The notes under the pieces were generated by a model that worked only from the letters and a program-made list of their open reading frames with translations, was not told the DNA's origin and searched no databases. Position numbers and translations under genes: made by a program. A stretch of DNA of 63,531 nt, counting the filler, from Octopus bimaculoides (taxonomy: Eukaryota), in assembly GCF_001194135.2 (NCBI RefSeq). It is 6 parts of 5 records of this genome, joined end to end, with 100 filler letters (N's around TTAATTAATTAA, not from the genome) between each part and the next. Parts side by side here need not be neighbours in the genome. Positions count along the whole stretch, not along the records: positions 25,553 to 47,312 come from NC_069010.1; 5 more parts are not named here. One strand, 5' to 3'. Shown here piece after piece: positions 26,001 to 47,312 of this stretch. The stretch's first letter is position 1; each line of letters begins with the position of its first letter.

Positions 26001-26066
26001 AAAATGTTAATCCTTAAGCAAGACAAACCACTTTAATTTGTACCCTTTTCCCTCTTTCTTCCCCAG

Positions 26067-26156
26067 TGCATTACACGGGGTTCTTTGAATTTGCTGACGA
26101 ACCTTTCGATTCCAGCAGACTGAGAGGGGAAGTCTTCAAGTTCCGACTAAGAAAAG
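26067..26156 (+). CDS. FKBP6: FKBP6 exon (FKBP domain: HYTGFFEFADEPFDSSRLRGEVFKFRLRK)
   Basis: Polypyrimidine tract + CAG acceptor, GTAAGT donor, phase 1/1. Confidence 0.9.
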
Positions 26157-27678: not shown

Positions 27679-27713
<35 letters not shown>

Positions 27714-30700: not shown

Positions 30701-31820
30701 TGTCTTGTGATTGTGATGTTGTGAGGTCGTTGTCTGCTGTTGTGAAGTGATTATGTTGTGGTTGTGGCATTGTGAGGTGGCCATCTTTTGGTGGTGTTCG
30801 GCAGATGTCTTGAGGTGTTGGGAGGCAACTGTCTTGTGATTGTGATGTTGTGAGGTCGTTGTCTGCTGTTGTGAAGTGATTATGTTGTGGTTGTGGCATT
30901 GTGAGGTGGCCATCTTTTGGTGGTGTTAGGCAGATGTCTCTTGGTGTTGGGAAGCAACTGTCTTGTGATGGTGGTGTTGTGAGGTCATTGTCTGCTTGTT
31001 ATCGTGTTGTGAGGTGATTATGTTGTGGTTGTGGCATTGTGAGGTGGCCATCTTTTGGTGGTGTTAGGCAGATGTCTCTTGGTGTTGGGAAGCAACTGTC
31101 TTGCGATTATGGTGTTGTGAGGTCGTTGTCTGCTTGTTATCGTGTTGTGAGGTGATTATGTTGTGGTTGTGGCATTGTGAGGTGGCCATCTTTTGGTGTT
31201 AGGCAGATGCCTTATGGTGTTGGGAAGCAACTGTCTTGTGATTGTGGTGTTGTGAGGTCGTCTGCTGTTGTGGTTGTGGCGTTGTGAGATGGCCATCTTT
31301 TGGTGTTGTTAGGCAGATGTCTTGTGATTGTGGTGTTGTGAGGTCGTTGTCTGCTGTTGTGAGGTGATTATGTTGTGGTGTTGTGAGGTGGCCATGTTTT
31401 GGTGTTGTTAGGCAGATGTTTTGAGGTGTTGGGAGGCAACTGTCTTGTGACTGTGGTGTTGTGAGGTCGTTGTCTGCTTGTTATCATGTTGTGAGGTGGT
31501 TCTGTTGTCTCTCCTAACTAATCCTTCCTTCTGCTGTTCCCATTGCAGGCCCTTCTGGTGCTTGACGAGTATGTGCCGTGCAACAGCGAAGAGGAACGTC
31601 AGATCCAAGAGTTACGCCTCTTGGTTCTCCTAAACATGGCCCTCTGCTGTCTCCGTCTCAACAATGCTCCCAAAGCCATCACATATTGCCAGAAAGCTCT
31701 GGCGATTGACAAGAACAACGCTAAGGCGTTTTACAGATTGGGACAGGTAAGTGGGTGTATATACGTGTGTGTATATAAGGACAGGTTGGTTAGGGTATGT
31801 GTATGTTAGGATAGATAAGG

Positions 31821-31855
<35 letters not shown>

Positions 31856-32161
31856 CATATATGTATATATATGTATTTAATGTAACCTCGTGCACATCGG
31901 TGGCGATTTTTTTCTTCCTCCGTTTTTCCCTTCTTTGAACTTTCCTTGTTTCCGACAAAGAGCTCCTCCCGAAACGTCATACTCTCTCTCTTTCCTTTCC
32001 TGAGCGTCTAGTAACACTATCCGTATCACGTCCTCACTTTGTTGTTTTTTTGTTATTGTTTTTTTTTAAAACATATATATATATATATTTTTATATGTAT
32101 ATGTATATATATATATGTGTGTATATATATATATATATGTATATGTATATGTATATATATA

Positions 32162-32194
<33 letters not shown>

Positions 32195-35100
32195 GTTAAA
32201 AAAAAAACAATAGGAAGGGCATCCAGCTGTAGAAACTCTGCCAAATTAGATTGGAGCCTGGTGTTGTCATCCGGTTTCACCAGTCCTCAGTCAAGTCGTC
32301 CAACCCATGCTAGCATGGAAAGCGGACGTTAAACGATGATGATGATGATGATGATATATATATGGACATGTATGTGTATACAGATGTATTTGTGTGTGTC
32401 TGTATTAACCTAATTTATAAACTAATGAATGTGTGTTTTGAGATTTAGCTACTATGTCTAGAAGGCTGTCTGTTTGTCTCCTTTTGCAGGCATACCAGAT
32501 GTTGGGCAAGTACAACGAGGCAGTCACCAACCTAAAGCTGGCTCAGAAGCTGCGACCAACAGATCCGAACGTTTCACAACAACTACAGAAACTGCACAGG
32601 TGAGTTAGGAGGGACCAGGGTTGGCACAAATGGGCTGAGGTAGGGCGGACTATACTCGAGGATTTACGGTAACATTTGACAGTAATCTGAATGCTAAGGG
32701 GTTAATAGTGTATCTAATGTATCCTTCCTTGTTTAGCCCCAGGTCAGTCCTGATCCAGTAGACCTATGATTGAAGATGTTCCAGCTGTGATTGTCCTGTC
32801 TTTTATTCAGGCATAGTGTATCTAGGACTACATTATCTAATGTGTCCTTCTTTATTGCTGTTTAGCCCTAGGTCAGTCCTGATCCTGACTGACCTATGAT
32901 CAAAGATGTTCCAGCTGTGACCGTCCTGTCTTTTATTCAGACATAGTGTATCTAGGACTACATTATCTAATGTGTTCTTCTTTATTGCTGTTTAGCCCTA
33001 GGTTAGTCCTGATCCTGACTGACCTATGATCAAAGATGTTCCAGCTGTGACCGTCCTGTCTTTTATTCAGGCATAGTGTATCTTGGACTACATTATCTAA
33101 TGTGTCCTTCCTTGTTGTTTTGCCCCAAGTCAGGTCTGATCCAGACAGACCTATGATCAGTGACGTTCCAGCTGTGACCATCCTGTCTTTTATTCAGGCA
33201 TTGTGTATCTAGGACTACATTATCTAATGTGTCCTTCCTTGTTGTTTTGCCCCAAGTCAGGTCTGATCCAGACAAATCTATGATCAGTGATGTTCCGTCT
33301 GTGACCACCCTGTCTTTCATTCAGGCATAGTGTATCTAGGACTACATTATCTAATGTGTTCTTCGGTATTTTCGAGTACTGTTAGATAGAGAATGTGACC
33401 ATCCAGGCAGAATTGTTTTATGCCTGCCAACAGGTGATATTCTAGTCCAGGGGTTTTCAAACTTTTTGACTTGCGGACCCCTTTATATTTCAGGCTTTAC
33501 CTTAGGGATCCCCTTATAAACACTTATGAAATTTATACATAAATATTTGCTTAAAATAACATATATTTTTACATTTATTTATTTAACAGTATTTAACAAA
33601 TTAACAAATAGGTTTATTGTCAATTAAAAGATTTCGATTAAAAGACATATAAAATCAAATTGCCCGNNNNNNNNNNNNNNNNNNNNNNNNNNNNNNNNNN
33701 NNNNNNNNNNNNNNNNNNNNNNNNNNNNNNNNNNNNNNNNNNNNNNNNNNNNNNNNNNNNNNNNNNNNNNNNNNNNNNNNNNNNNNNNNNNNNNNNNNNN
33801 NNNNNNNNNNNNNNNNNNNNNNNNNNNNNNNNNNNNNNNNNNNNNNNNNNNNNNNNNNNNNNNNNNNNNNNNNNNNNNNATTCTAGTCCAGGGGTTTTCA
33901 AACTTTTTGACTTGCGGACCCCTTTATATTTCAGGCTTTACCTTAGGGATCCCCTTATAAACACTTATGAAATTTATACATAAATATTTGCTTAAAATAA
34001 CATATATTTTTACATTTATTTATTTAACAGTATTTAACAAATTAACAAATAGGTTTATTGTCAATTAAAAGATTTCGATTAAAAGACATATAAAATCAAA
34101 TTGCCCGTAAAAAGTATTTGCTGTCTACGGACCCCCTGTCTTGTCCTTGTGGTCCCCGGACCACAGTTTGAAAAGCCCTCTTCTAGTCATGTGTTTTTGA
34201 GTACCGTTCATTGGCTAACAGAATCGATGCTCTGCTACAGCCTGTGTAGCAGCCGTGACATTGCTCCTCTCAAAATCACCTCGTTTGTGACGCGGTTCTG
34301 CTTGTCGACCCTCAAGGTCTTTCTGAGGCACCTCAGAAGAGCAGGGCCACCCGTACCTATCGGTAAAAACTACATACCCTCACGCTCACTCACTATGTCT
34401 TTCTCTCTCTTTCTTTCTCTCTTCCCTCAGCGATGTCCTCCAATACAAACAAGACGAGAAAGCCATGTACAAGAAAATGTTTTGCCAAACCACAAAGAAA
34501 TCGCAGTTGTCTTTATGTAAGTATTTCTGGATCTTCCCATTGTTGTTCTTGTTCTTTGTGCAGTTTGATGTTTAAACCCTAGGTCAGTCTTAGACCACCA
34601 AACCTGTAAGCAGTTGATCCAACATGTAAGCAGTAAGCAGTTGATCAAACAAAATGCAGTTCACAGATCTATCGTTTCATACATAATAGGAACCTAACTG
34701 TCTACACACCACACACAAACACACACATGCACATATATCATGGTTCTGGGTTCAGTCCCACAGTGGGGCACCTTGTGCAAGTGTCTTCTACTATGGCCGC
34801 AAGAGGACCAGACCCTTGTCAGTGGATTCAATAAGATGGTAACTATATGAAGCCCATCTTATATACTCTTTTGTTCTTTTACTTGTTTCACTCATTTGAC
34901 TGCGGCCATACTGGAGCACTGCTTTGAAGGGTTTTAGTTGAACAAATCAGTTACATTTTTGAAGCCTAGTACTTACTCTATTGGTCTCTTTTGCTGAACT
35001 GCCAAGTTACGGGGACGTAAACACACCAACATTGGTTACCAAGCTATGTTGGGGTAACACACACACTTATATATATTCTTATATGTTATATATTCTTTTA

Positions 35101-35306
35101 TTTGTTTCAATCATTTGACTGCGGCCATGCTGGAGCACCGCTTTTAGTCGTGTAAATCGACCCCAGGACTTATTCTTTGTAAGCCTTGTACTTATTCTAT
35201 CAGTCTCTCTTGCCAAACTGCTAGCTGACAGGGACGTAAACACACCAGCATCGGTTGTCAAGCGATGTTGGGGGACAAACACAGACACAAACATATACAT
35301 ACATAC

Positions 35307-35349
<43 letters not shown>

Positions 35350-38031
35350 CAACGGGCTTCTTTCAGTTTCCGTCTACCAAATCCACTTACAAGGCTTTGG
35401 TCGGCCCGAGGCTATAGTAGAAGACACTTGCCCAAGGTGCCACGCAGTGGGACTGAACCCAGAACCATGTGGTTTGTAAGCAAGCTACTTACCACACAGC
35501 CACTCAGAAATTTATTTTGTGGAACTATTTTTCGGATATATTCTGTATTCTTTTGTCATATGACGCCAGTGTCAACCTGGATGGTCACATCTGGAGCACT
35601 TTTGTTACAGGTCCAATGCATCAAGGCTGGTCTTCGGCTAGACGACAACATAAACAGCAGCAGCAATTTTTATTCATTTCTAAGATCTCTGTCTCCTCTT
35701 TTTTTTGGTTTTCTTGTGCAGTTCCTTCAAATCGGGAGAACATGGTCCAGGAATCGGGCGAAAAAGTTGTTGAAGTTTCTGAAGAATTTAAAGAAAATGT
35801 CAACAACTACCTTAAGTGAGTGTCTTGTTGCTTACATTAGGGTCATCATCATCATCATCACCATCACTATCATCATTGCCACCACTGTCATCACCACCAT
35901 CGTCATCGTCATTGCCATCATCATCATCACCACCACCACCACCATCATCATTATTTGACCCTTTAGCATTCAAATTACTCTGTCAAATGTGATCCTTATT
36001 TATTCACATTGTTTTGAATTAATCATAGATTATCTCATAGCGTTCAAATTTCAATGATATCATCATCATCATCGTCGTCGTCGTCGTTTAACGTCCGCTT
36101 TCCATGCTGGCATGGGTCGGACGATTTGACTGAGCACTGGTGAAAACCAGATGGCTACACCAGGCTCCAATCTGACTTGGCAGAGTTTCTACAGCTGGAT
36201 GCGCTTCCTAACACCAATCACTCCGAGAGTGTAGTATCGGGGGTTGATAAATTAAATACCAATGAAATACTGGGGGTCGATGTAATACTAGTCCCCTCCC
36301 ACCAAATTTGAGGCACTGTGCCTCCAATAGAAAGGATTATTATTATTATTAAAGCAATGAGCTGGCAGAATTGTAAGCATGTTGGCAAAAATACTTAGCA
36401 GCATTTTGTCCATCTTTGTTCCGAGTTCAAATTCCGCCAAAGTCAAGTTTGCCTGTCATCCTTTTGGGGTCAGTACCAGTCAAATACTGGGGACAGTGTA
36501 ATCGGCTTACCCCCCCTCCCTCACAATTACTGGCTTTGTGCCGAAATTTGGAATGAATATTATTATTATTATTGTTGTTATTTACTTTTGTTATTGCAGG
36601 AACTTTCTCTCAGACAATTGCCGGAGTGAATGTCCAATGCCTGCCTCCAGCATGACCGTGGCCGAGATAGCTTATGTCCTAGAAATAGTCGATGATATGA
36701 AACTCATAGCTGTACAGACTGGTTCGGTGAGTTCAGTTGGCTTCTTAAATATCATGTCACCAGTGGAGCCCCTACCCTCATCGACAGATCATTCCTATCA
36801 CATGTTAACCCTCTCCTAGATGTTCTGGTACATATGCTCTCCCTTGCTGCAGCGAGGTGTGAACTGAGGTAATGTAGAATACAGTGTTGTGTGACAGAGA
36901 CACTACGGTGAGAGATAAATCTCCTCCTGGATAAGATGCCAGTCTATCATGCTAACATTCCCCCAGATGATCTGATACCTATTATTCCTTACATGTTAAG
37001 TGTCCCTCCAGCTCTTCTGTTATTGTATTTCTGTTGTAATACACATTTGTTTCTATTCATCATCGTTTAACATCCGCCTTCCATGTTAGCATGGGTGGGA
37101 TGGTTTCACAAGAGCCAGTCAGGCAAAAGCCGGCACTAGACTTCTGTGACTATTTTGGCAGGATTTTTACAGCTGGATGCCCTTCCTAAAACCAGCCAAC
37201 TCAGCAGAGTGGACTTGGTGCTTTTTATCGGGCGCAAGCGAGGGCAGTTTTGGCAAGGCTTTTACAGTCGGATGCCCTTCCGCACACCAAACACTTTACA
37301 GTGTGGACTGGATGCTTTTAAGTGGCACCGGCACTGACAGGGTCACCAAGAATTTGCAAGACAAAAAAAAAAATCTTTCAAGCCGGGAGTGGGTATTGGA
37401 GGAGGTGATCTTGTGTTGGATGACAAAAGGTTAGAGTGAGACAGACAGAGAAACAGGTGTCTTGCTGTAGAGGAAGTACAAGCTTAACTGGCCAGAGAGA
37501 GGGGTTAGGAATGAAGACAGAAATAGGTGTACTACCGCAAAGGAAATACATGGCTACCCAACCTGAGCGAAGCGCATGAAAGTAACTAAACAATTTACTA
37601 AAATACTTTTGTCGTTAATTAATCTGGTGTTTAGAACATAAATTACCATGATTTAACGAGGGAATATTTTAATTGGGATCATTTTTCAACAGGAAATTCG
37701 TATTATGGAAACAAGGGCAGTTTCAATGAGATTTCGTATTAAAAGGAGTGTTGGTCGTAAGTGGATCTCAAGTTAGTTTTAAGTGTCTTATTTCTGTGCA
37801 ACCTCACTTTATTTACTCCCCAGCCCCACTCTACTTAGTGTTTAACCTCACTCAAGATAGTGTACAGTTCCACTCAGGTGACTCTCCAGCTTCACTCCAC
37901 TGATGTCTGTCTTCTAACTCTCTACTCCTCTATTACAGGGTGAAAACATTCAGATCGAAATCCGCAAGAACAACAACAACAAGACCAGCAACAATAGGAA
38001 AGTGAAGAAGCGTGAAATGGTGTGGAAGTAA
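26067..38031 (+). CDS. FKBP6: FKBP6/Shutdown-like FKBP-type PPIase + TPR co-chaperone; 11 exons, 5'-incomplete
   Basis: Exons 26067-26156, 27343-27474, 28539-28609, 28784-28843, 29998-30057, 31549-31746, 32490-32599, 34431-34516, 35722-35815, 36600-36726 and 37939-38031 all have AG/GT boundaries and compatible phases, ending at TAA 38029-38031. The translation has an FKBP domain (VHYTGFFEFADEPFDSSRLRG..GELSRFLISPEYGFGDFGCPPRIP..LFEIELLSF), close to the FKBP6 pattern Y.G..E..D.PFDS/GCPP.IP/LFEIELL, then TPRs (LLNMALCCLRLNNAPKAITYCQKALAIDKNNAKAFYRLGQAYQMLGKYNEA) and YK.MF. Confidence 0.9.
26258..26593 (+). mobile_element. tRNA-derived SINE (family B)
   Basis: Near-identical to the reverse complement of 5681-6060. 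Confidence 0.85.
27343..27474 (+). CDS. FKBP6: FKBP6 exon (MVIPGW..GCPPRIPKAIT)
   Basis: TACAG acceptor, GTCAGT donor, phase 1/1, FKBP motif. Confidence 0.9.
27895..28475. mobile_element. Palindromic MITE with GGATC termini and a central (TAACCC)n (Merlin-like)
   Basis: Inverted arms; 8-bp TSD CTAGCATC at 27887-94 and 28476-83; CCCTAACCCTAACCCTA at ~28207-28222. Confidence 0.85.
28539..28609 (+). CDS. FKBP6: FKBP6 exon (LFEIELLSFVEDAGIEDYFQMTE)
   Basis: TTTCAG acceptor, GTAAAT donor; C-terminal strand of the FKBP domain. Confidence 0.88.
28784..28843 (+). CDS. FKBP6: FKBP6 exon (EEKSQIPFDQILKIANMEKS)
   Basis: TTCCAG acceptor, GTAAAT donor, phase 0/0. Confidence 0.85.
29201..29581 (-). mobile_element. 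tRNA-derived SINE (family C)
   Basis: Same sequence as 35091-35504; partial copies at 34742-35060, 61066-61203 and 28910-29140; head contains GGTTCAGTCCC and GGCACCTTGGGCAAGT. Confidence 0.85.
29998..30057 (+). CDS. FKBP6: FKBP6 exon (TPR1 start: FGTEFFSAKKIRKSYNKYRL)
   Basis: TTTACAG acceptor, GTAAGT donor, phase 0/0. Confidence 0.88.
30065..31500. repeat. G/T-rich higher-order minisatellite in a FKBP6 intron
   Basis: Recurring TGTTGTGAGGT submotif grouped into variable larger blocks (GGCCATCTTTTGG..GGCAGATGTC..GCAACTGTCTTG). Confidence 0.9.
31549..31746 (+). CDS. FKBP6: FKBP6 exon (TPR2-3)
   Basis: TGCAG acceptor, GTAAGT donor; TPR consensus NMALC..AITYCQKALAID.NNAKAFYRLGQ. Confidence 0.92.
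31948..31983 (+). ncRNA. Degenerate minimal hammerhead-like remnant inside a dispersed repeat (31871-32050)
   Basis: GTTT-CCGACAA-AGAGCTCCTCCC-GAAACGT-C-ATAC has the same layout as 14906-14940 but a mutated core and stem II. Confidence 0.3.
32490..32599 (+). CDS. FKBP6: FKBP6 exon (TPR3: AYQMLGKYNEAVTNLKLAQKLRPTD)
   Basis: TTTGCAG acceptor, GTGAGT donor, phase 0/2. Confidence 0.9.
32705..33362. repeat. ~104-bp tandem repeat, about 6 copies
   Basis: CTAGGACTACATTATCTAATGTG..GACCTATGATC..TTCCAGCTGTGACC recurs about every 104 bp. Confidence 0.9.
33448..34180. mobile_element. hAT (Charlie-like) MITE
   Basis: TIRs CAGGGGTTTTCAAACT / AGTTTGAAAAGCCCTC; 8-bp TSD TTCTAGTC at 33440-47 and 34181-88. 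Its left ~227 bp are duplicated across the N-gap, probably an assembly overlap. Confidence 0.88.
34431..34516 (+). CDS. FKBP6: FKBP6 exon (DVLQYKQDEKAMYKKMFCQTTKKSQLSL)
   Basis: CCTCAG acceptor, GTAAGT donor, phase 2/1; EK.MYKKMF helix typical after FKBP TPRs. Confidence 0.88.
35091..35504 (-). mobile_element. tRNA-derived SINE (family C)
   Basis: High identity to 29201-29581. Confidence 0.85.
35722..37938 (+). CDS. FKBP6: FKBP6 C-terminal extension exons 35722-35815 and 36600-36726
   Basis: GTGCAG/GTGAGT and TTGCAG/GTGAGT boundaries; phases 1/2 and 2/0 join the flanking exons. Confidence 0.75.
36061..36240. mobile_element. Dispersed SINE-like repeat with (CAT)n end (family D); other copies at 32205-32355, 37060-37450 and 40175-40218
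   Basis: Shared CATCATCGTTTAACGTCCGCTTTCCATGCT..CATGGG motif. Confidence 0.7.
37939..38031 (+). CDS. FKBP6: FKBP6 terminal coding exon (GENIQIEIRK..VWK*)
   Basis: Polypyrimidine + TACAG acceptor, phase 0, open to TAA. Confidence 0.7.
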   Translation, partial: GENIQIEIRKNNNNKTSNNRKVKKREMVWK

Positions 38032-38140
38032 TTTGCCATGAGGTAGGGGACGCACAGACAGGCAGGCAACTACGATTACACATCTCCACACATACATGCT
38101 TACATATGCATACACACGCGCATGTGCGTGTATATATATA

Positions 38141-38418
38141 CAGGGTGTCTACAAGGTCTGGGTACATGGAGTAAATTAAATATAAGAAATAATAATTTCT
38201 TAAAGTATGTGTTAATCCCCATGTGGCTACATGGAGTAAATAAAATCATAACATAAGCAATTAAATATAAGAAATAATAATTTCTTAAAGTATGTGTTAA
38301 ATCCCCATGTGGGTACATGGAGTAAATAAAATCATAGCATAAACAATCAAATATAAGAAATAATGATTTCTTAAAGTATGTGTTAATCCTCATGTACCCA
38401 GAGTTTGAGGACACCCTG
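38141..38418. mobile_element. Tc1/mariner-type MITE with internal ~70-bp tandem repeats
   Basis: TIRs CAGGGTGTCT..GGGTACATG / CATGTACCCAG..GACACCCTG with TA flanks. Confidence 0.8.
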
Positions 38419-40329
38419 TATATTCACATACATACTCACATATAATGTATGTATGTGTGTGAATATGTATATATATGTATGTATTTTTGTGTATGTCTGT
38501 GTATTAATATATGTATGTATATACATACACACACATAAATATATATACACACACATACATATAAATACACACATAAAGATCTTTTACTCATTCCATCTAT
38601 TTTATTAAGACTGTTATATATATATGTATGTATGTATATATATATATGTATGTATGTATATATATATGTATGTATATATATATATTATTTTTTAATTTTT
38701 ATTTGATTTTTTTTTTTNNNNNNNNNNNNNNNNNNNNNNNNNNNNNNNNNNNNNNNNNNNNNNNNNNNNNNNNNNNNNNNNNNNNNNNNNNNNNNNNNNN
38801 NNNNNNNNNNNNNNNNNNNNNNNNNNNNNNNNNNNNNNNNNNNNNNNNNNNNNNNNNNNNNNNNNNNNNNNNNNNNNNNNNNNNNNNNNNNNNNNNNNNN
38901 NNNNNNNNNNNNNNNNNNNNNNNNNNNNNNNNNNNNNNNNNNNNNNNNNNNNNNNNNNNNNNNNNNNNNNNNNNNNNNNNNNNNNNNNNNNNNNNNNNNN
39001 NNNNNNNNNNNNNNNNNNNNNNNNNNNNNNNNNNNNNNNNNNNNNNNNNNNNNNNNNNNNNNNNNNNNNNNNNNNNNNNNNNNNNNNNNNNNNNNNNNNN
39101 NNNNNNNNNNNNNNNNNNNNNNNNNNNNNNNNNNNNNNNNNNNNNNNNNNNNNNNNNNNNNNNNNNNNNNNNNNNNNNNNNNNNNNNNNNNNNNNNNNNN
39201 NNNNNNNNNNNNNNNNNNNNNNNNNNNNNNNNNNNNNNNNNNNNNNNNNNNNNNNNNNNNNNNNNNNNNNNNNNNNNNNNNNNNNNNNNNNNNNNNNNNN
39301 NNNNNNNNNNNNATATATATATATGCATCTGTGTGTATATGTATGTATATATATATATATATATATGGAGGACAGTCTGTATATATGTATGTATGTATCT
39401 ATATATATATGAATGTATGTATATATATTTTATATGCATGTGTATATATATATATATATATGCATGTAAGTATCTATATATATATATATTATACATATAC
39501 ACACACAAACCTATATATATGCACATACTCACAGAGACTCATACAGGAACATAAGTGGTTGAAACCATGTAACACAAGGTCTTTTGGTGTGATGCTCCAC
39601 CGATTCTGCCAACTGCTCTCTTAGAAACTTCATTATTTTCCCAAATATATCTTTTCCCATTCTTTCCCTTCCTTAGTGTCTCTCTGACACACATACACAC
39701 ACACACACATATATTTGTATGTATACTTTCACATATATACGCATGTATGTTTATATAGCTTAATGGTACAGACCACTCAGCTGGAATTTTGAGAAGTAGA
39801 GGATTTAATCTGCCAAAAATATCTTCCCTATCTCCTAAACTGTTTCCATAGCTATTCTGCTTATGAAACTTGACTTAATTTTTTCTAAAATTCCAAATTA
39901 CTTGATGCTCCGAAGTGTGTCTGTAAATATATTTATATATATATAATGTTATACTCTTCCAAGATGTTGTGATAGTGACTGGGCACACAATACTATAATA
40001 GTAAAGGAAACAAGTGTTTTCATTGGTTGGTTGGGCGAGAGGTGACTGGACTCTGGGCTTGTCCTCTCATATCTCTCCCCCAACCATAGAAGTCCTTAAA
40101 ACGGTGCAATAAAAGCCTGTTATTTCATTAGAAAAGAAAAAGAAAAAGCAAAGATTTCACAAGACATCTTTAATCATCATCATCATCATCGTTTAATGTC
40201 CGCTTTCCATGCTAGCATNNNNNNNNNNNNNNNNNNNNNNNNNNNNNNNNNNNNNNNNNNNNNNNNNNNNNNNNNNNNNNNNNNNNNNNNNNNNNNNNNN
40301 NNNNNNNNNNNNNNNNNNCATTCATGTCA

Positions 40330-40667
40330 GGATTACATGCAAAATTTAAAGAGTGATTAATCATGCGGGAAGATTATTCAAACTTCATTGATAAGGAACA
40401 AGAGGGGCCGGATCTGGTTCATCAGCATCAGATTCCTGTACTTCTTTGCATTTCAGCCATTGTTTCTTTATGGCCGGTCGCTGTCGGTCTTCGTCATTGG
40501 TGTTTAACTTTGATGAAGATATTGGTACCTTCCAGAATACATTTCAACCTCTCCGACATTGTTTGTGGTAAACCACATTTCTTCGGTGTATATTAGACGC
40601 TCATCTACACAGCTACCGAAGGTAAAATTGTCGCTGGCTTGACATTGCATTCTGCCCGACGTTATTT
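40330..40667 (-). pseudogene. NS1 helicase fragment (copy 4, B/B' region only)
   Basis: GRMQCQASDNFTFGSCVDERLIYTEEMWFTTNNVGE, then frameshifted KCILEGTNIFIKVKHQ; homologous to copies 1 and 2. Confidence 0.8.
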
Positions 40668-40960
40668 GAAAATATATGAACACCTTGCAAGTTTTTTCTG
40701 AATACAATTTTCCTGGGACTCTTCAGGGGTTGTAGCTTAGTGTTTTGCCTCAACTTCCAATAATGTCTATCTGTTCCTCCTCATGATAAAATGCATCTCT
40801 TTCTAAAGCCAGATGTAAACAATTCTTGCCTTCTGCATCAACAGCACCTTTTGAAAATATAATATGAACACCTTGCAAGTTTTTTCTGAATACAATTTTC
40901 CTGGGACTCTTCAGGGGTCGTAGCTTAGTGTTTTGCCTCATCTTCCAAGCTTGAAATAAA
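40668..40960 (-). pseudogene. Decayed ankyrin-repeat gene fragment, with an ~85-bp direct duplication (40668-40750 / 40852-40940)
   Basis: NLQGVHIIFSKGAVDAEGKNCLHLALERD matches the ankyrin pattern L..GA...D..G..xLHLA. Confidence 0.7.
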
Positions 40961-41072
40961 GGCAGGGTCATCTGGTCCTTCAGGGGAACTGTTGTCTAGG
41001 TCAGTAGGTAGCTTCCTTTTTTGGGTTTCACTTTCTCTGAGATTGAAATAACATCATCCTACTGTGTGCCCT

Positions 41073-41079
41073 CACAAAA

Positions 41080-41110
<31 letters not shown>

Positions 41111-41191
41111 CTTCCGCGCTGATCCGTCCAAGCCCGTTCCCTTGGCTGTGGTTTTGCTAGACAGTGGGAATCTCATTGATCCATTCATGCA

Positions 41192-41223
<32 letters not shown>
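41073..41223 (-). pseudogene. 28S rRNA: 28S rDNA fragment starting exactly at the R2 insertion site
   Basis: The reverse complement reads TAGCCAAATGCCTCGTCATCTAATTAGTGACGTGCATGAATGGATCAATGAGATTCCCACTGT..GCCAAGGGAACGGGCTTGG..GAAGACCCTGTTGAGCTTGACTCTAGT, i.e. conserved 28S sequence with substitutions and an ~13-nt deletion. Confidence 0.95.
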
Positions 41224-42300
41224 GTCCAACTTGCTTTCGCTATCTTTCCTTGTTAATTTAACATGGGCGGTCCCACTGCGCTCGCCAAATAGTGACCTGG
41301 ATCAAGCACTATCATAAGCCGAGGGTAAGGCCCCAACAGCGCACGAGGCCGACAGGGGGTTCGAATTGAAGGGCGACTGACTGGACGAAACCGACAGGCC
41401 CCCTACGCCTGTCATTGGACACTCTTTCGGGCATGGTCTCTGTTGGGGCCAAGCTTCCGGATGCTACGTGGGACGGGTCTAGTCAGCGCCTGTACCCCGC
41501 CCTGCGATGGAGCTGCAGGGAAACGGGGTCTCGATACACGCACAACAAGCGAGGGACTTGAGGAGTGTCCAACGATTGCCGCAAGATGGAAAAGCGACTA
41601 CGACTACAAATCGACCGGCGAAACTGAGAAATACCGACCCAGCAACCGAGAAACTCAGACACGGACATAGCGGGACCGTGCGACTGTATATCGTCGCTAC
41701 ACGATCCTGACGAAACCTCGAACCAAAAGCGACCGGCACCGAATACTACGAAACCCAGCCGAATCACTAAACACCAAGAGCCGGAGGGTGCCTTCGCATG
41801 CCCTGTCCTGATATGAGGTCCCCGAGCGAACCCTGAGAGACCGTAGTCAGAACCTGCCGGATGGAACTGGCAGTAAACTCTAGAAACGACGTCGACGCCC
41901 AGGTAGGAGGGGATTATCGCCCACACTCCCACTGTAATCGAACGTTGGGACACGCCCCTTGATCCACCCTCATGGATCAGTCCCTAAGCATGCTGTACGT
42001 GCAGAGCATTGCTGTCCTGCTCAGCAACTTCATTAANNNNNNNNNNGTAGTCAGAACCTGCCGGATGGAACTGGCAGTAAACTCTAGAAACGACGTCGAC
42101 GCCCAGGTAGGAGGGGATTATCGCCCACACTCCCACTGTAATCGAACGTTGGGACACGCCCCTTGATCCACCCTCATGGATCAGTCCCTAAGCATGCTGT
42201 ACGTGCAGAGCATTGCTGTCCTGCTCAGCAACTTCATTAACGACTTGTCCCTAATGCACAGAGCTTTCAATGCCCTCTCGGCCTCGCGGCTCCAGGCACA
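41224..42300 (-). mobile_element. 5'-truncated R2 retrotransposon: C-terminus of the ORF plus 3' UTR
   Basis: 42181-42300 translates AWSREAERALKALCIRDKSLMKLLSRTAMLCTYSMLRD*, resembling the end of an R2 restriction-like endonuclease domain. A GC-rich UTR follows and ends precisely at 28S TAGCC, replacing the normal upstream TTAAGG. Confidence 0.8.
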
Positions 42301-42625
42301 AATATTTAAAAATCCACTTATCTGACATAAGTATGGATTCCTTCTTATAATGAAACAAATCTTTTTTTATAGCAAGGTGCAAACAACTATTGCTACCTCT
42401 GGATGAAAAAGGGCTCAACCTTAATCCTAACCCTCTCTCACAGCAGAAATTTCAAAATCCACTTATCTGACATAAGTATGTATTCCTTCCCATAATGAAA
42501 CCAATCTTTCTTTACAGCAAGATGTAAACAACTATTGCTACCTCTGTCAACAGCGCCTTTTTGAAATAAAATGTGGACCCCCTCCAAGCAGACGCTTGGA
42601 CCCAGCATGGGTTTTCTCAACACAA
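42301..42625 (-). pseudogene. Decayed ankyrin-repeat fragments (~140-bp unit)
   Basis: EGVHILFQKGAVDRGSNSCLHLAVKKDWF plus a partial second unit. Confidence 0.7.
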
Positions 42626-42629
42626 TAAA

Positions 42630-43110
42630 AAATATAAAGACGCTATTGTTTGATCTGTATCTTAAATTTACCTGTTGTATATGCATAACTTGGTATATTG
42701 TAGAACGTTCTTTTCATTTCTCTATTTCTTTTTTAGGAAGACAATTCTCTCTCATGTTTGGTTCTTCATATAAACATAGTTTGATGTTGACCATGTCTTG
42801 AAAAGGAAAAGATGATCCCCCTTGTGTTGTTCATGTGAATCTGAAAAGTTTATCAATTGATTTTGCATTGTATGATTTACCCCTGTTGGGTGTACCTTCC
42901 ATTATAAATGTATTTCTTTTTGGTATATTTTGATGTAAGTTGTTCTATAGTTCTTGGACAAATTGTTGAGTATCAATGGATTGGATATCCATAATTCTCT
43001 CGAATATTTTGAATGATAAGTCTAGATTATGACAGTCATTGGTTTTGTAAGATTTGCAAAATTCATCATTTCAGGATAATTTTGAAATCCGAGAGATATT
43101 GAGGAGGTTT
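42630..43110 (-). pseudogene. Endogenous parvovirus-like NS1 helicase fragment of a second, divergent lineage (copy 3)
   Basis: Hand translation IPKRNTFIMEGTPNRGKSYNAKSIDKLFRFT*TTQGGSSFPFQDMVNIKLCLYEEP; Walker A 42873-42896, Walker B LYEEP; in-frame stops hide it from the ORF track. Confidence 0.8.
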
Positions 43111-43123
43111 GTTAAGAACTCTC

Positions 43124-43900
43124 TTACGCAGTTCGCTTAAAGTATCTTTTCTTAGAATTACCAACAATTGAGACTTGGCAAGCAATGTTTGTCACTTGAA
43201 TTTTTGTGTAGTTTTGCCATATTGTTAACCAAATTAATGGGTTCAGTTCTTTTTGTCCCCATTCTTTTAGTTGTGGCATTGGTCTATGCGTTTTGTATAG
43301 GAACATTCTTGCTTTTTATGGCTTCTTCTTCTTGTGAACATCTGTCCCAAGGGAATGAGTTTCCGGTGCTTAAACAGGGTGTGCGCTTCATTATTCTTTC
43401 TGCCTGGTGTTTTTATGTTTATGTAGGTATCTGTACCTTCTAGGATGCATTTTGCCTCCTCGATATTGGTGTTGACGAACTACATTTCGTCAGTAAAAAT
43501 TAAAGTTTTGTCGATACAAGTACCGAATGTGAAATTATCGGATGCTTGGCATCGCATCCTACCGCAGTTCAGGAACGTAAGATGTAGCGCTTTCCCGAAT
43601 TGGGTGCTCCGTGAATGTGGAGAGAATTTTTCTTGGGTAGAATTTTGTGACATACGTCGAATATGTCTTTGGTGAATGCTTGCGAATCGATGTGGAGGAA
43701 GGATGTCCAGCTTTCATAAATTCCTAGAGAGGTAGTGACATTCCAGTAGGATACACGTTCGTGTACAAAGGTAACAAAAAGTCCACAGACGCAGAAATTT
43801 TCGGCCCAGTAGGGCGAAAATTGCTGTAAAAAAACAGACAACAGTTCGAATCCAAGTAGAATACACAACCACAAAATAACGATAGACGAACAAAAACGAA
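43124..43900 (-). pseudogene. Endogenous parvovirus/densovirus-like NS1 SF3 helicase fragment (copy 2, most complete)
   Basis: PKKNSLHIHGAPNSGKR (43587-43610), frameshift, then NCGRMRCQASDNFTFGTCIDKTLIFTDEM*..EEAKCILEG..INIKHQAERIMKRTPCLSTGNSFPW..AIKARMF: motifs A, B, B', C and Arg finger in order. Confidence 0.88.
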
Positions 43901-43949
43901 CTCACTCAACAATAGCAGGTAGCAGAGAAAATTCTCGATACACAGCTGA

Positions 43950-44630
43950 AAAAAGGCTCAACCCTAACCCTCTCTCACAACAGAAATTTCAAAATCCACT
44001 TATCTGACATAAGTATGGATTCCTTCTCATAATGAAACAAATCTTTCTTTACAGCAAGGTGTAAACAACTATTGCCACCTTGAATTTTTATGTAGTTTTG
44101 CCATATTGTTAACCACATTAATGGGTTCAGTTCTTTTTGTCCCCATTCTTTTAGTTGTGGCATTGGTCTATGCGTTTTGTATAGGAGCATTCTTGCTTTT
44201 ATGGCTTCTTCTTTTTTTATAGCAAGGTGTAAACAACTATTGCTACCTCTCGATGAAAAAAGGCTCAACCCTAACCCTAACCCTCTCTCACAGCAGAAAT
44301 TTCAAAATCCACTTATCTGACATAAGTATGGATTCCTTCCCATAGTGAAACAAATCCTTCTTTACAGCAAGGTGTAAACAATTATTGCTACCTCTGGATG
44401 AAAAAAGGCTCAACCCTCACCCTAACCCTCTCTCACAGCAGAGATTTCAAAATCCACTTATCTGACATAAGTATGGATTCCTTCCCATAATGAAACAAAT
44501 CTTTCTTTACAGCAAGGTGTAAACAATTATTGCCACCTCTGTCAACAGCACCTTTTGAAATAAAATGTGGACCCCCCTCCAAGGGGACTCTTGGACCCAG
44601 CATGGATTTTCTCAACACAATAGATTTTAT
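43950..44630 (-). repeat. Tandem ~140-145-bp ankyrin-fragment units with an embedded NS1 piece
   Basis: The unit AGGCTCAACCCTAACCCTCTCTCACAGCAGAAATTTCAAAATCCACTTATCTGACATAAG..ACAGCAAGGTGTAAACAACTATTG recurs at ~43954, ~44261 and ~44406; the minus strand reads G.N.CLHLAVKKDLF. Confidence 0.8.
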
Positions 44631-44889
44631 CACAATTGAAGATGTTCCTCAAACTTTTTGTGTTGTCCCGTTTGGAACATATTTCCATTGTCCCTGAATT
44701 CCCTATTTTTCACCAGTTCAAAGAGGTTATCCCCAAACTTGGTCTACAGTTTTGAGTTTTGGGATCTTTTTTTTTTCTTCCGTTTTTGAAGCTCTGTGAC
44801 ATATTCAACTTAAAATGTCTTCTGCTGCTTTCACCTACAATTGAGACACGACCAAGCAATGTCTGTCTGTTTGTCTCAGTCTCCCTTTT

Positions 44890-45436
44890 ATTCCGACAAT
44901 GTCTAACTTCATCTCATCCAACATGTCCATGAGTTCATTCTCACGACGAAAGGAATCTATCTTCAAAGCAAGAGGGAGACATTTATGGCCTTTCCCATCA
45001 ACAGCACCTTTGGAAAATGTCAATCCTTCAAAGGTGGCCCCTAGATACAGCAAGGAGCAGTGTTTCCATATCACCACAGTTCTGTCTCCATGTATTTTAC
45101 AGACCCTGGGACATTCTCACTACAATAGATTTTATCAGAATTGAAAATGTTCCTTCTCTTCTTGTGTTGTTCCTGTTAGAACATCTGACCATTTCTATGA
45201 AGAGTGTTAATATCTGCCTCTTCAGCTGTTAACATGTGAATCTTCCCAAGGTGACCCCTGGAGATGGCTTAACCAACTCCTCGTGCAACACGGTAGCTGT
45301 CCCGAGTGTTGCTCTCAGCAGCCACTTCCGTTGAAGAGATGATCCTCTTCATGAAGACACATTGCTTCTCCAGCTGGGCACTCAGACACCCGAACTCTGC
45401 CTTCCTGTTGTTGTAAGGTTGGGTACTTTCAGCCAT
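44890..45436 (-). pseudogene. Decayed ankyrin-repeat host gene exon beginning at a splice acceptor + ATG
   Basis: TTTTTCTGTGTTATTTCAG|ATGGCTGAA at ~45436; downstream frames read AEEADINTL, KSIV and FSKGAVDGKGHKCLPLA..DMLDE; frameshifted. Confidence 0.5.
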
Positions 45437-45779
45437 CTGAAATAACACAGAAAAAATATTTATAACCATGTCAATTGAAGTAGAAGTGAAAAATAACTTA
45501 TCGTACAGTGATACTATACCACAGTATCGGACAAAAGGACGATTTCCTCTTTCTCTCTAACTCTATTAGAATTCTTCTCCAAAGTTCCGTGTATTCAGTC
45601 CCAGTATTATGAAAGTAGGACGCTGTTCTGGCTGGGGAGAAGACAGCTGCTGATTGACTCTGTTAAATTTGCCGTCGGTTCAAAAAACCCCATATCTCGC
45701 GGGCTGCACCTAACGCAAATCTGAACAAGCTGCTGCAGGCTGCATTTGGCATTTAGCAAGCGAATCAGCGATGTAGTTG

Positions 45780-46440
45780 AATAAGATTGAATACCAGAGA
45801 AATGGCCAGTCACTTCTTTAAGTAGAGGCATTGGTTGAATTGGTTGAATCGTTTTGAATATAAACATTCTGGCTCAAATTGCTGCCTTTTCCTGTGGACA
45901 TCTATCCGATGGTGTTTTAGAATTCTTTCGTATTGGAGTTTTGTTTTGCCCTATATTTCTGTACTTTCCCGTATGCATTTACCTTCTTCAATATTAGTGT
46001 TGATGAACCATATTTCGTCAGTGAATATCAAGGTTTTGTCAATGCATGTTCCGAAAGTAAAGTTGTCGTTTGCTTGACAACGCATTCGTCCACAGTTCAT
46101 TAAGTCGTTTCTTATTGATCGTAAAATGTAGCCTTTTCCAGAATTTGGAACTCCATGTATATGTAGTGAGTTTCTTTTCGGAAGAATTTTCTGGCAGACA
46201 TCGAAGAGATTTTTAGCAGATGTTACGTGATTAATATGGTGGTACATTGTCCACTTTTCGTAAATCCCTAAGGATGTTTTGACATCCCAGAAGGTGTTAG
46301 ATGCTTCTTCAAAGAACATTTTTTTATCTTGAATTTTGGTCGCATATTGGAGTCATGCGGTTCTCAATCTGTAGTTGTGTGGCTGCAGGTAGTAGCCAGG
46401 AATTTAAGTTTGGTGTATTTCAGTATATGGACATCCATGT
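45780..46440 (-). pseudogene. Endogenous parvovirus/densovirus-like NS1 SF3 helicase fragment (copy 1)
   Basis: PKRNSLHIHGVPNSGKGYIL (Walker A 46131-46154), LIFTDE (Walker B), EEGKCI (B'), AAI*ARMF (Arg-finger region); stops and deletions present. Confidence 0.85.
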
Positions 46441-46444
46441 GTCG

Positions 46445-47312
46445 TAGTACATATTTTTTCCGACAGTTAATACGAAGTGTGTTATATCTCCTAAGCCTGT
46501 AGAGTTATATTACAAAAATCCTTACCTTTGTCGTAGGGAACTGAGGTAGCCAGTATAGACCATTCCAAGGAGAATTGTTTATTGCAATTTTTCAGTTCCC
46601 AAATAAATTTACTTAGGCCGGTGCTGTTAGCTTTATTCCTATCCCTAAATGAAGAATAATGGTTCGATATTCTCTTGGAGACCTGCGTCGATGAGCTACC
46701 TACCTAAAACGAGACATCTGCGTAAGACATTACCTTACATTGATAAACCACATTCTTGGTCTTGGCATTTGCACTTAAAAACTTAATTCTATTAGGATTT
46801 GATTCCGAGATGCTAATCTTATTATTGTTACAGATATTGTTATGATTCCTAATATTGTACGTACTACCTATATTAATACCTAAATGACTATTGCCATCAT
46901 ATGAGTGTGTTAAATTACTGGAGTAATTATTATAGTTATTGATATAAACATTACTATTATCATCATAACTGGGATGGCTGTCTAGAGATGAATCTAAAAG
47001 CCTGAAGTTATGGGAAGATATAATCTGTAACAAATTTTTAGTATTCGAAAACCCAAATCTAACCTTATGTGAGTTGATTATTGGGTAATAGTAGGAACCC
47101 CTAGGAAAGTTCCTACTCACCGCGTCTTGGAACTGCCGGACCAAATTTGATTTAACTTGCTTCCCAAATGGGAGGATGAGCCAGATATTATCATCAAATC
47201 TAGTTACAGTATTAGTGTGGTTGAATAGATGAAGATTTTTGTTTTTGTTAAAGTGTTTAGAGCCAGTTGGGCCTCCTCTCTTATGTGAGTGATAAGCATG
47301 ATCCACTTTCTC
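46445..47312 (-). mobile_element. Penelope-like element (Naiad-like), RT C-terminus + GIY-YIG endonuclease, decayed
   Basis: IWLILPFGKQVKSNL..FP..YYPIINSHKVRFGFSNTKNLLQIISSHN matches the PLE post-RT motif. Then NVVYQCKV..F*VGSSSTQVSKRISNHYSSFRDRNKANSTGLSKFIWELK..EWSILATSVPYDKGKDFCN is the GIY-YIG, with TAG in place of the Y of YVG. Confidence 0.85.

What the first reader, a model, noticed from the sequence alone, without database searches (positions are those of the whole stretch)
37939..47312. Antisense virus/TE fragment block directly downstream of the piRNA co-chaperone gene FKBP6/Shutdown
Established: FKBP6/Shutdown is an HSP90 co-chaperone required for piRNA biogenesis, and uni-strand piRNA clusters accumulate TE and endogenous viral fragments antisense to their transcription. 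Seen: FKBP6 ends at 38031 on +, and the all-minus mosaic starts about 2.3 kb later. Read-through or a + strand transcript would therefore be antisense to NS1, PLE, R2 and ankyrin. Inference: a germline antiviral piRNA source linked to a piRNA-pathway gene.
Basis: inference. Interest (0 to 1): 0.75.

Follow-up and report, generated by a model that had tools for sequence, protein, structure and literature searches.

The report
Decayed parvovirus-gene fragments beside FKBP6
Downstream of a genuine cephalopod FKBP6 gene lies a scrambled patch of dead parvovirus-like helicase fragments, a local repeat and a ribosomal-DNA/R2 scrap, all on one strand; it is a plausible but wholly untested small-RNA source, and its position next to FKBP6 looks coincidental.

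Summary
FKBP6 is real and ends at 38031 on the + strand. Its exons match cuttlefish FKBP6, and poly(A) signals follow the stop within 300 nt. From 40390 to 47312 every recognisable coding remnant lies on the minus strand. There are five parvovirus NS1 (SF3 helicase) fragments, an R2 3' end joined to a decayed 28S piece exactly at the R2 target site, and a weak GIY-YIG-like pseudogene. The "ankyrin" is not a gene. It is a non-coding 145-nt repeat with no codon constraint and no Pfam match above threshold. "PLE" is unproven. NS1 fragments A, B and C differ mainly at third codon positions (about 80/84/41 % identity at positions 1/2/3). They therefore diverged as working genes and are separate captures. 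B' and the repeat blocks are recent local copies. Two assembly gaps separate the block from FKBP6, and a third gap is an assembly duplicate. No such block lies within 10 kb downstream of the two Sepia FKBP6 genes (only about 2.6 kb past the true end of the closer paralog could be read). piRNA production cannot be tested with these tools. Verdict: an endogenous parvoviral fragment cluster, a new member of a known kind, of moderate interest.

The parts
26066..38031 (+). FKBP6 gene, partial. It holds the exons for residues ~117-483 of the cuttlefish-type long FKBP6; the 5' exons lie beyond the piece's edge. This is the neighbour, not part of the block.
   Evidence: tblastn of P0011 gives 10 colinear exons at 40-72% identity. 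P0011's 90% cluster contains P0156, and P0045 is itself named 'FKBP6 [Acanthosepion pharaonis]' by the source. Further full-length hits are named FKBP6 in rays, a sponge and a crinoid.
37939..38031 (+). Last FKBP6 exon, with its stop codon.
   Evidence: An AG acceptor precedes 37939. The translation GENIQIEIRK...VWK* lines up by eye with the C-terminus of P0011 (GENMCIRIRK...). tblastn did not report this short exon at E<0.5.
38239..38330 (+). Two canonical AATAAA poly(A) signals inside an ~85-nt tandem repeat of the 3' UTR.
38718..39312 (.). Assembly gap 1 (595 N) between TA/TG microsatellites.
   Evidence: No coding feature spans it.
40219..40318 (.). Assembly gap 2 (100 N). It cuts a SINE-like repeat head (40173-40218) on the left and NS1 fragment C on the right.
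40390..40665 (-). NS1 fragment C, the middle of the SF3 helicase domain. It is truncated at both ends and has at least 1 frameshift.
   Evidence: tblastn and tblastx against P0001-P0005 and L001-L005 give E 1e-15 to 1e-22.
40665..40995 (-). Repeat X, copy C (the 'ankyrin-like' unit), with an internal 96-99-nt duplication.
   Evidence: No Pfam hit.
41077..41228 (-). Decayed 28S rRNA fragment that starts at +1 of the R2 target site.
   Evidence: Rfam LSU_rRNA_eukarya E 1.4e-7. Junction sequence. Site definition from PMC3414825. Against the Rfam consensus it has 4 substitutions (3 of them CpG transitions) and a 13-nt deletion.
41229..42240 (-). 5'-truncated R2-type 3' end, GC-rich. The span includes an artefactual 204-bp assembly duplicate around the 10-N gap 42037-42046.
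   Evidence: It abuts 28S at the R2 site. The exact 194-bp duplicate is shown. No RT or endonuclease coding match was found.
42298..42654 (-). Repeat X, copy B (units of 145 nt that carry TTAGGGTTAGGG).
   Evidence: 92% identical to 44299-44622. Sequence.
42855..43043 (-). NS1 fragment D, the region before Walker A. It is weak and tentative, with 1 in-frame stop.
   Evidence: tblastn with P0001 gives E 7e-6 and 37% identity.
43148..43769 (-). NS1 fragment B, covering the helicase domain through to the C-terminal region. It has 2 frameshifts and at least 1 in-frame stop.
   Evidence: tblastn gives E 1e-29 to 1e-46, and the core is 70-78% identical to P0003-P0005.
43947..44689 (-). Repeat X array (about 2.2 tandem 145-nt units plus partial units), with NS1 piece B' embedded in it.
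   Evidence: TRF reports period 145 and 95% matches.
44041..44208 (-). NS1 fragment B', a recent copy of the C-terminal piece of B.
   Evidence: 96% nucleotide identity to 43195-43333. tblastn E 2e-11.
44782..45193 (-). Diverged repeat X copy A1 plus segment Y (Y is 44782-44867, which matches 43107-43193).
45814..46506 (-). NS1 fragment A, covering the linker, the helicase core and a degenerate C-terminal remnant. It has 1 frameshift and 1 in-frame stop in the matched part. No nuclease domain and no capsid gene are present.
   Evidence: Pfam Parvo_NS1 E 2.9e-10 on its longest open stretch. tblastn E up to 7e-49. tblastx against L001-L003 extends the match to 46506.
46494..47312 (-). It is one reading frame with 1 in-frame stop and is cut off by the edge of the piece.
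   Evidence: Pfam GIY-YIG gives only E 0.037 on 70 aa. The 273-aa query gives nothing. No homologs or PDB matches were found.

Best explanation
The block 40.3-47.3 kb is an intergenic patchwork of dead sequence: a cluster of endogenous parvovirus-like elements.

What is shown:
- It holds only pieces of the NS1/Rep SF3 helicase domain. There is no nuclease domain, no capsid gene and no termini.
- The pieces derive from at least three anciently diverged lineages of one NS1 family (A, B, C, and possibly D).
- They are interleaved in scrambled order with a local non-coding 145-nt repeat (X).
- The block also holds one decayed R2-28S junction fragment (an rDNA 'orphon') and one GIY-YIG-like pseudogene.
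- A, B and C diverged from each other while still under protein-coding constraint, so they are separate captures.
- B' and the X blocks are recent local duplicates.

What is inferred:
- Viral DNA was captured repeatedly at or next to a resident copy. Homology- or microhomology-guided joining would explain both the clustering and the shared orientation.
- Unequal recombination among the X repeats then shuffled and duplicated the pieces, and everything decayed neutrally.
- Its tail-to-tail position next to FKBP6 is coincidental.
- Whether the locus is transcribed into piRNA precursors remains open.
For: - NS1 identity: Pfam E 2.9e-10, above the cut-off. Relatives P0002 and P0003 give E 1e-15. 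The profile against AAV Rep40/68 gives E 1e-11.
- Five minus-strand fragments all overlap the same helicase region. They are therefore paralogous copies, not successive exons.
- Each longer fragment (A, B, C, D) carries a stop and/or a frameshift; B' is an unbroken 41-49-codon piece.
- Codon-position identities between A, B and C are about 80/84/41 %. pN is 0.17-0.20 and pS is about 0.9.
- The X copies show no such third-position effect. They have a 145-nt period and no Pfam support.
- The order of the NS1, X and Y pieces differs between units.
- Recent duplicates: B' is 96% identical to part of B, and X_B is 92% identical to X_A2.
- The 28S piece starts at the R2 site and carries CpG-type decay.
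- The relatives are also broken. They sit on short contigs, and two of these end in host-type microsatellite.
- Parvovirus-related sequences were already reported in molluscs, including the Octopus bimaculoides genome (PMC5013282).
Against: - Three or four independent captures of a seemingly low-copy family within 6 kb, all in one orientation, are very unlikely under random integration. Some non-random process must be assumed (homology-guided capture, selection for a trap locus, or a higher copy number than seen), and none of these was shown.
- The copy number of this NS1 family and of repeat X in the source genome is unknown.
- The link to FKBP6 and the 3' end of fragment C fall in assembly gaps.
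- No exogenous virus of this NS1 family was found. A viral rather than transposon or host-gene origin therefore rests on Pfam and PDB homology only.
Confidence: 0.6

Rival explanations
1. The block is, or is part of, a uni-strand piRNA cluster transcribed on the + strand, either by read-through from FKBP6 or from its own promoter. Its transcript would be antisense to the captured parvovirus and retroelement fragments and would supply antiviral and anti-TE piRNAs.
For: - All recognisable coding remnants are on the minus strand.
- At least three NS1 lineages that diverged under selection are clustered and co-oriented. This pattern is typical of EVE-bearing piRNA clusters in mosquitoes (background in PMC7522710, which I saw only as a title and abstract).
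- All copies are fragmentary and dead.
- Molluscs, including octopus, carry conserved PIWI genes, and piRNAs were found ubiquitously in the molluscs sampled (PMC6128900; PMC12479628).
Against: - No expression or small-RNA evidence exists.
- Poly(A) signals directly follow the FKBP6 stop, and six more lie on the + strand within the block.
- Part of the co-orientation is due to recent tandem duplication.
- Only about 7 kb and three or four kinds of element are seen, and two claimed components fail.
- The block is absent from the downstream sequence read for both Sepia FKBP6 paralogs.
- Scaffold gaps separate the gene from the block.
Confidence: 0.2
2. The NS1-like sequences are not captured virus. 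They would be pseudogenised members of a genomic multi-copy family, either a transposon-like element that carries an NS1/Rep helicase and prefers repeat X as a target, or a tandem array of once-functional host genes derived from NS1. Clustering and a shared orientation would then be expected.
For: - Divergence under purifying selection fits any long-lived coding family.
- All known relatives come from assemblies of sequencing runs, not from virus collections.
- Fragment A's longest ORF begins and ends at the same alignment columns as P0001 from another sample.
- Every NS1 piece abuts X repeats.
Against: - Only five relatives were found among 5.8 billion proteins, which argues against a high-copy family.
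- X is absent from the five related contigs.
- The NS1/X order is inconsistent between units, so there is no defined element structure.
- Relative L002 encodes HUH-like and Y-motif sequence upstream of the helicase. I noted this by eye as the layout I recall for parvoviral NS1; Pfam found no nuclease domain there.
Confidence: 0.12
3. The mosaic is partly an assembly chimera. Reads from repeats (rDNA/R2, the X satellite, NS1 copies from elsewhere) would have been mis-joined, so the apparent cluster and its linkage to FKBP6 would not exist in the genome.
For: - There are three gaps in 9 kb.
- Exact duplicates flank two gaps of the piece.
- The GC-rich R2 segment contains one of them.
- Repeat-rich sequence is error-prone in assembly.
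Against: - The NS1-X, X-R2 and 28S-X junctions lie inside gap-free sequence (40319-42036 and 42047-47312).
- The 28S piece is decayed rather than identical to the conserved rRNA consensus, as expected for an old genomic insertion.
- A, B and C are too diverged to be collapsed copies of one locus.
Confidence: 0.08

Closest known systems
Endogenous parvoviral elements (EPVs) and parvovirus-related sequences in animal genomes, including molluscs and Octopus bimaculoides (Francois et al. 2016, PMC5013282)
   Same: Both are NS1/Rep SF3-helicase-derived sequence, fragmentary, broken by stops and frameshifts, and embedded in host repeats. Mollusc sequences in that study were closer to Parvovirinae than to densoviruses. 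Here too the best solved-structure match is AAV Rep.
   Different: Here several fragments from diverged lineages sit together in one orientation, scrambled with a local repeat. This NS1 family has no relative in the virus or metagenome collections searched. By eye, it also differs from the octopus sequence KOF81493 shown in that paper's supplement.
EVE-rich piRNA clusters of Aedes mosquitoes and the uni-strand cluster flamenco of Drosophila
   Same: Both show co-oriented, fragmentary virus and TE remnants from several independent captures in a small region next to an ordinary gene.
   Different: Those loci are defined by small-RNA output and precursor transcripts, which are untested here. They hold mainly RNA-virus or retroviral fragments and span tens to hundreds of kb. 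Here about 7 kb is visible and it holds DNA-virus helicase pieces.
Scattered or clustered parvoviral (IHHNV) EVE fragments in penaeid shrimp genomes (reviewed in PMC11357303)
   Same: The review describes endogenous parvoviral EVEs that lack hairpins and are inserted in a marine invertebrate genome. [quoted passage not shown]
   Different: The shrimp EVEs are close to a known circulating virus. Here no exogenous relative is known, and the fragments are saturated at synonymous sites relative to each other.
rDNA orphons carrying R2 insertions
   Same: The 28S sequence starts exactly at the R2 insertion site and is preceded by a 5'-truncated, non-coding R2-type 3' end.
   Different: Only about 150 nt of 28S and about 0.8 kb of the element remain, inside an unrelated repeat array. 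No R2 coding sequence is left to confirm the clade.

Membership tests
Endogenous parvoviral element | Significant similarity to parvoviral NS1/Rep (SF3 helicase). | tested here: met
   Pfam Parvo_NS1 E 2.9e-10, 40 bits against a cut-off of 20. Profile against AAV Rep40/68 E 1e-11.
Endogenous parvoviral element | Walker A P-loop and the downstream conserved helicase motifs. | tested here: met
   Invariant G..SGK, D/E and further columns are shared by fragment A and five relatives.
Endogenous parvoviral element | Embedded in host genomic DNA. | tested here: met
   It is contiguous with local repeats, a 28S/R2 orphon and microsatellites inside gap-free sequence. Linkage to FKBP6 itself is only by scaffold across two gaps.
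Endogenous parvoviral element | Loss of coding integrity or truncation. | tested here: met
   A, B, C and D each carry stops and/or frameshifts; B' is an unbroken short piece. All five pieces are truncated to helicase-domain parts. No nuclease domain or capsid match was found in the window.
Uni-strand piRNA cluster | Dense 24-31-nt, 1U-biased small RNAs from one strand. | not testable with these tools
   No expression data are available here. O. bimaculoides small-RNA libraries exist (PMC12479628).
Uni-strand piRNA cluster | TE and virus fragments predominantly antisense to the direction of transcription. | tested here: inconclusive
   All coding remnants are on the minus strand. However, the direction of transcription is unknown and part of the bias is due to local duplication.
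Uni-strand piRNA cluster | A single long precursor transcript from a defined promoter, or read-through. | not testable with these tools
   The only indirect evidence is the AATAAA signals at 38239 and 38325 and six more on the + strand in the block, which argue mildly against read-through.
Uni-strand piRNA cluster | Conservation of the locus relative to flanking genes in related species. | tested here: not met
   No NS1-like sequence was found within 10 kb of the annotated ends of the two Sepia pharaonis FKBP6 paralogs (only about 2.6 kb past the true last exon of paralog 1). Their flanks are unrelated to the block. Sepia is a distant relative, so this is weak evidence.
Ankyrin-repeat gene | Pfam Ank-family match above the curated threshold. 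| tested here: not met
   The best hit is E 0.0044 and 17.7 bits against a cut-off of 21.1, with no passing stretch and in one copy only. The other copies give nothing.
Ankyrin-repeat gene | Coding constraint and a repeat length of about 33 codons. | tested here: not met
   The period is 145 nt, which is not a multiple of 3. Codon-position identities are flat, for example 68/81/68 and 84/81/86.
Penelope-like element | Reverse transcriptase domain. | tested here: not met
   No RT match was found in any frame of the block. The piece ends at 47312, so an upstream RT cannot be excluded.
Penelope-like element | GIY-YIG endonuclease domain. | tested here: inconclusive
   Pfam E 0.037 on 70 aa. The 273-aa query gives no hit. 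No PDB match or homologs were found.
R2 retrotransposon | 3' junction with 28S at the specific R2 site. | tested here: met
   28S homology starts at TAGCCAAATGCCTCG, which is +1 to +15 of the R2 site (PMC3414825).
R2 retrotransposon | R2 RT or restriction-like endonuclease open reading frame. | tested here: not met
   The roughly 0.8 kb that is present has no Pfam or PDB match. This is consistent with a 5'-truncated copy that retains only the 3' UTR.
FKBP6 (Shutdown orthologue) | FKBP_C and TPR architecture, with the closest named relatives being FKBP6. | tested here: met
   FKBP and TPR exons are present. The best full-length relatives are named FKBP6 in cuttlefish, rays, a sponge and a crinoid. 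The PDB alone could not separate FKBP6 from FKBP4/5.

The most novel reading that the evidence does not exclude
The locus is a recurrent capture site, a 'viral trap'. Fragments of at least three long-diverged parvovirus-like lineages would have accumulated there in one orientation, and the site would work as a uni-strand piRNA cluster giving a cephalopod heritable small-RNA memory of DNA viruses. This would extend the arthropod EVE-piRNA model to Lophotrochozoa and to parvoviruses.
Probability: 0.15. Interest if true: 0.65.

Novelty: new member of a known kind. Interest (0 to 1): 0.35.

Why it matters
Endogenous parvoviral fragments are already known in molluscs, including octopus, so the block itself is ordinary. 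One feature is worth noting. Several helicase fragments that diverged as working genes (synonymous sites saturated, protein conserved) ended up within 6 kb in one orientation. Random integration does not explain that.

If small-RNA data showed strand-specific piRNAs here, it would be a rare case of a DNA-virus EVE cluster acting as a piRNA source outside arthropods. If not, the block still records an otherwise unsampled parvovirus-like lineage that has long been associated with the genomes that carry these fragments, apparently cephalopods.

The FKBP6 neighbourhood adds a good story but no mechanism.

Tried and rejected
- A concatenated FKBP exon query in the word-indexed protein search gave no hit at E<=1e-10. 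FKBP6 was identified through the representative search plus cluster names instead.
- The GIY-YIG-like query found no homologs, no Pfam family when extended and no PDB match.
- Rfam at gathering threshold found nothing in the piece. The 28S fragment appeared only at the E-value threshold.
- The translated R2 segment had no Pfam or PDB match. Its 3' 272 nt fold no better than shuffled sequence (z -0.23).
- No tRNA-like SINE heads were found.
- + strand ORFs in the block gave no credible Pfam hit. Baculo_p33 at E 0.0026 is below the cut-off and was treated as chance.
- IMG/VR and JGI metagenome scans for NS1 relatives found none.
- Exact look-ups of two window ORFs found no other assembly that could bridge the gaps.
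- AlphaFold on the six-sequence NS1 alignment gave pLDDT 32.6. It is unusable, so no fold search was run.
- I rejected 'X is part of the viral element'. X is absent from related contigs and shows no coding constraint.
- I rejected 'A, B and C are neutral local duplicates', because of the third-codon-position pattern.

Full report
**Scope and gaps**

Only 25553-47312 is genome sequence. N runs lie at 26629-27085, 33667-33879, 38718-39312, 40219-40318 and 42037-42046.

- Gap 42037-42046 is flanked by an exact 194-bp direct duplicate, 41843-42036 = 42047-42240. The intronic gap 33667-33879 is flanked in the same way by a 228-bp duplicate. These are assembler artefacts, and the sequence across the 10-N gap is most likely continuous with one copy.
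- Gap 40219-40318 cuts a SINE-like repeat on its left. The stretch 40173-40218 matches 36068-36113 and 32307-32352, and those copies continue further. On its right it cuts NS1 fragment C. The two sides are therefore not continuous.
- Gap 38718-39312 lies in TA/TG microsatellite.
- No reading frame spans any of these gaps. The block is joined to FKBP6 only by scaffolding.

**The neighbour is FKBP6**

PDB searches showed FKBP and TPR domains but could not separate FKBP6 from FKBP4/5. A full HMMER search with the 66-aa TPR exon resolved this.

- The best single-stretch, full-length hits were P0011 (56% identity) and P0045.
- The sources name P0045 and P0156, a member of P0011's 90% cluster, 'FKBP6 [Acanthosepion/Sepia pharaonis]'. 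Other such hits are named FKBP6 in rays, a sponge and a crinoid.
- tblastn of P0011 finds ten colinear + strand exons between 26066 and 36726 at 40-72% identity.
- The last exon, 37939-38031, has an AG acceptor and a TAA stop. Its product, GENIQIEIRK..., lines up by eye with the P0011 C-terminus.
- AATAAA signals on the + strand at 38239 and 38325 suggest the mRNA ends about 0.25-0.3 kb past the stop.

**What the block contains**

One open stretch in fragment A matches Pfam Parvo_NS1 at E 2.9e-10, 40 bits against a cut-off of 20. It also matches AAV Rep40. A profile of it and its relatives matches AAV Rep40/68 at E 1e-11 over the whole SF3 helicase domain.

The word-indexed search found only five relatives among 5.8 billion proteins. 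All come from short Logan contigs, and all carry Parvo_NS1 (precomputed; E 1e-15 for P0002 and P0003). One contig (L002) also encodes an upstream region in which I see HUH-like and Y motifs by eye, the layout I recall for parvoviral NS1.

tblastn and tblastx with these relatives map five fragments, all on the minus strand:

| Fragment | Coordinates (minus strand) | Note |
|---|---|---|
| A | 46506->45814 | |
| B | 43769->43148 | |
| B' | 44208->44041 | |
| D | 43043->42855 | weak, E 7e-6 |
| C | 40665->40390 | |

All five cover parts of the same helicase region. The window holds no nuclease-domain, capsid or other viral match.

| Fragment | Breaks |
|---|---|
| A | 1 frameshift and 1 stop in the matched part |
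| B | 2 frameshifts and at least 1 stop |
| C | at least 1 frameshift; truncated at both ends |
| D | 1 stop |
| B' | none; a short piece |

The R2 claim holds at the junction. A 28S fragment on the minus strand (Rfam E 1.4e-7) begins exactly with TAGCCAAATGCCTCG. [quoted passage not shown] The GC-rich sequence 5' of it on the minus strand (41229-42240, about 0.8 kb once the artefactual duplicate is discounted) has no coding match. It is therefore best read as a 5'-truncated R2 3' end. Against the Rfam consensus, the 28S piece has four substitutions (three of them CpG transitions) and a 13-nt deletion. It is an old decayed orphon, not live rDNA mis-assembled here.

The 'ankyrin' claim fails. 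The units form a 145-nt tandem or dispersed repeat, which I call X. On the minus strand they carry TTAGGGTTAGGG. Only one copy reaches Pfam Ank at E 0.0044, below the cut-off, and the others give nothing. Diverged copies show flat identity across codon positions, for example 68/81/68. X is absent from the related NS1 contigs.

The 'PLE' claim is unproven. The frame 46494-47312 has one in-frame stop and a GIY-YIG hit at E 0.037 on 70 aa. Nothing else supports it. No RT is present, and the piece ends at 47312.

**History of the fragments**

A, B and C are 64-70% identical in nucleotides, about as far from each other as from the contigs of other samples. Their differences are concentrated at third codon positions.

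- Identity at codon positions 1/2/3 is 80/84/41 % for A-B, 83/75/42 % for A-C and 80/77/40 % for B-C.
- pN is 0.17-0.20 and pS is about 0.9.

They therefore diverged under purifying selection, as replicating entities or working genes. They are separate captures, not neutral copies of one insertion.

By contrast, B' is 96% identical to the C-terminal part of B, and the X blocks 42304-42627 and 44299-44622 are 92% identical. These are recent local duplications. The order of the NS1, X and a third segment Y differs among the units, so the region has been shuffled. All internal repeats are direct (17 of 17).

**Is the strand bias meaningful?**

Counting A, B(+B'), C, D, R2/28S and the GIY-YIG-like piece as six independent units, the probability that all lie on one strand is 2 x 0.5^6 = 0.03. 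If the NS1 pieces arrived or were arranged together, there are three units and P = 0.25.

The stronger anomaly is the clustering. Several diverged members of an apparently rare family lie within 6 kb. This calls for a non-random process. Candidates are capture guided by homology to a resident copy, selection for a trap locus, or an unrecognised high copy number.

**The piRNA idea**

The geometry fits, and molluscs have PIWI genes and ubiquitous piRNAs (PMC6128900; PMC12479628). No expression evidence is available here, and several points weigh against the specific story:
- Poly(A) signals directly follow FKBP6, and six more lie on the + strand in the block.
- Two gaps intervene.
- In Sepia pharaonis, no NS1-like sequence and no similarity to the block was found in the 10 kb downstream of either annotated FKBP6 paralog. 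For the closer paralog, tblastn places the true last exon about 7 kb past the annotated end, so only about 2.6 kb of real downstream sequence was read.
- The Sepia downstream neighbours are a dynein C-terminal gene and a GN3L GTPase gene.
- No known mechanism ties FKBP6 to a neighbouring piRNA source.

I therefore treat the adjacency as coincidental and piRNA production as open, at about 0.15-0.2.

**Comparison and novelty**

Parvovirus-related sequences, some of them endogenous, are documented across invertebrates. They include four mollusc classes and an Octopus bimaculoides genomic contig (PMC5013282). This block is a new member of that kind.

It is unusual for two reasons. It holds multiple lineages in one orientation, and its NS1 family has no relative in IMG/VR or the JGI metagenomes.

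**Failed attempt**

The structure prediction failed (pLDDT 32.6), so no fold search was run.

Noticed in passing
window 33439-34107: Gap 33667-33879 in an FKBP6 intron is flanked by an exact 228-bp duplicate. This is the same assembler artefact as at 42037-42046.
   Followed up: partly
window 30068-31508: A long tandem array lies in an FKBP6 intron. Its copies are 73-90% identical, and it shows very strong GC skew (up to +0.6) and AT skew (down to -0.54).
   Followed up: no
window 32711-33370 and 25593-25995: Two further tandem repeat arrays are present. One has a ~130-nt period and lies in an intron. The other has a ~100-125-nt period and lies at the start of the piece.
   Followed up: no
window 42298-42654, 43947-44689: Each 145-nt X unit carries two telomere-type TTAGGG repeats on the minus strand. 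The origin of X (satellite, SINE or subtelomeric repeat) is unknown.
   Followed up: partly
window 45814-46506 versus L003: The longest ORF in NS1 fragment A begins and ends at the same alignment columns as P0001 from an unrelated sequencing run (60% amino-acid identity). This could be a shared ancestral truncation, a genuine feature of that lineage's gene, or coincidence.
   Followed up: partly
window 41077-41228: Three of the four substitutions in the 28S orphon are CpG transitions. This is consistent with germline CpG methylation of this block.
   Followed up: no
L006 / L008 (Sepia pharaonis CAHIKZ030002225.1): The cuttlefish has two FKBP6 paralogs arranged head-to-head. The annotated 392-aa model of one (P0156) lacks C-terminal exons that tblastn with P0011 finds further downstream.
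   Followed up: partly
window 38174-38395: The presumed FKBP6 3' UTR contains an ~85-nt unit in about three tandem copies. Two of the copies carry an AATAAA signal.
   Followed up: no
window 40173-40218, 36065-36210, 32211-32355, 37057-37188: A SINE-like repeat whose head is (ATC)n-GTTTAATGTCCGCTTTCCATGCTAGCAT occurs in both orientations in FKBP6 introns, and once at the edge of gap 2. The block itself shares no repeat family with the gene region.
   Followed up: partly
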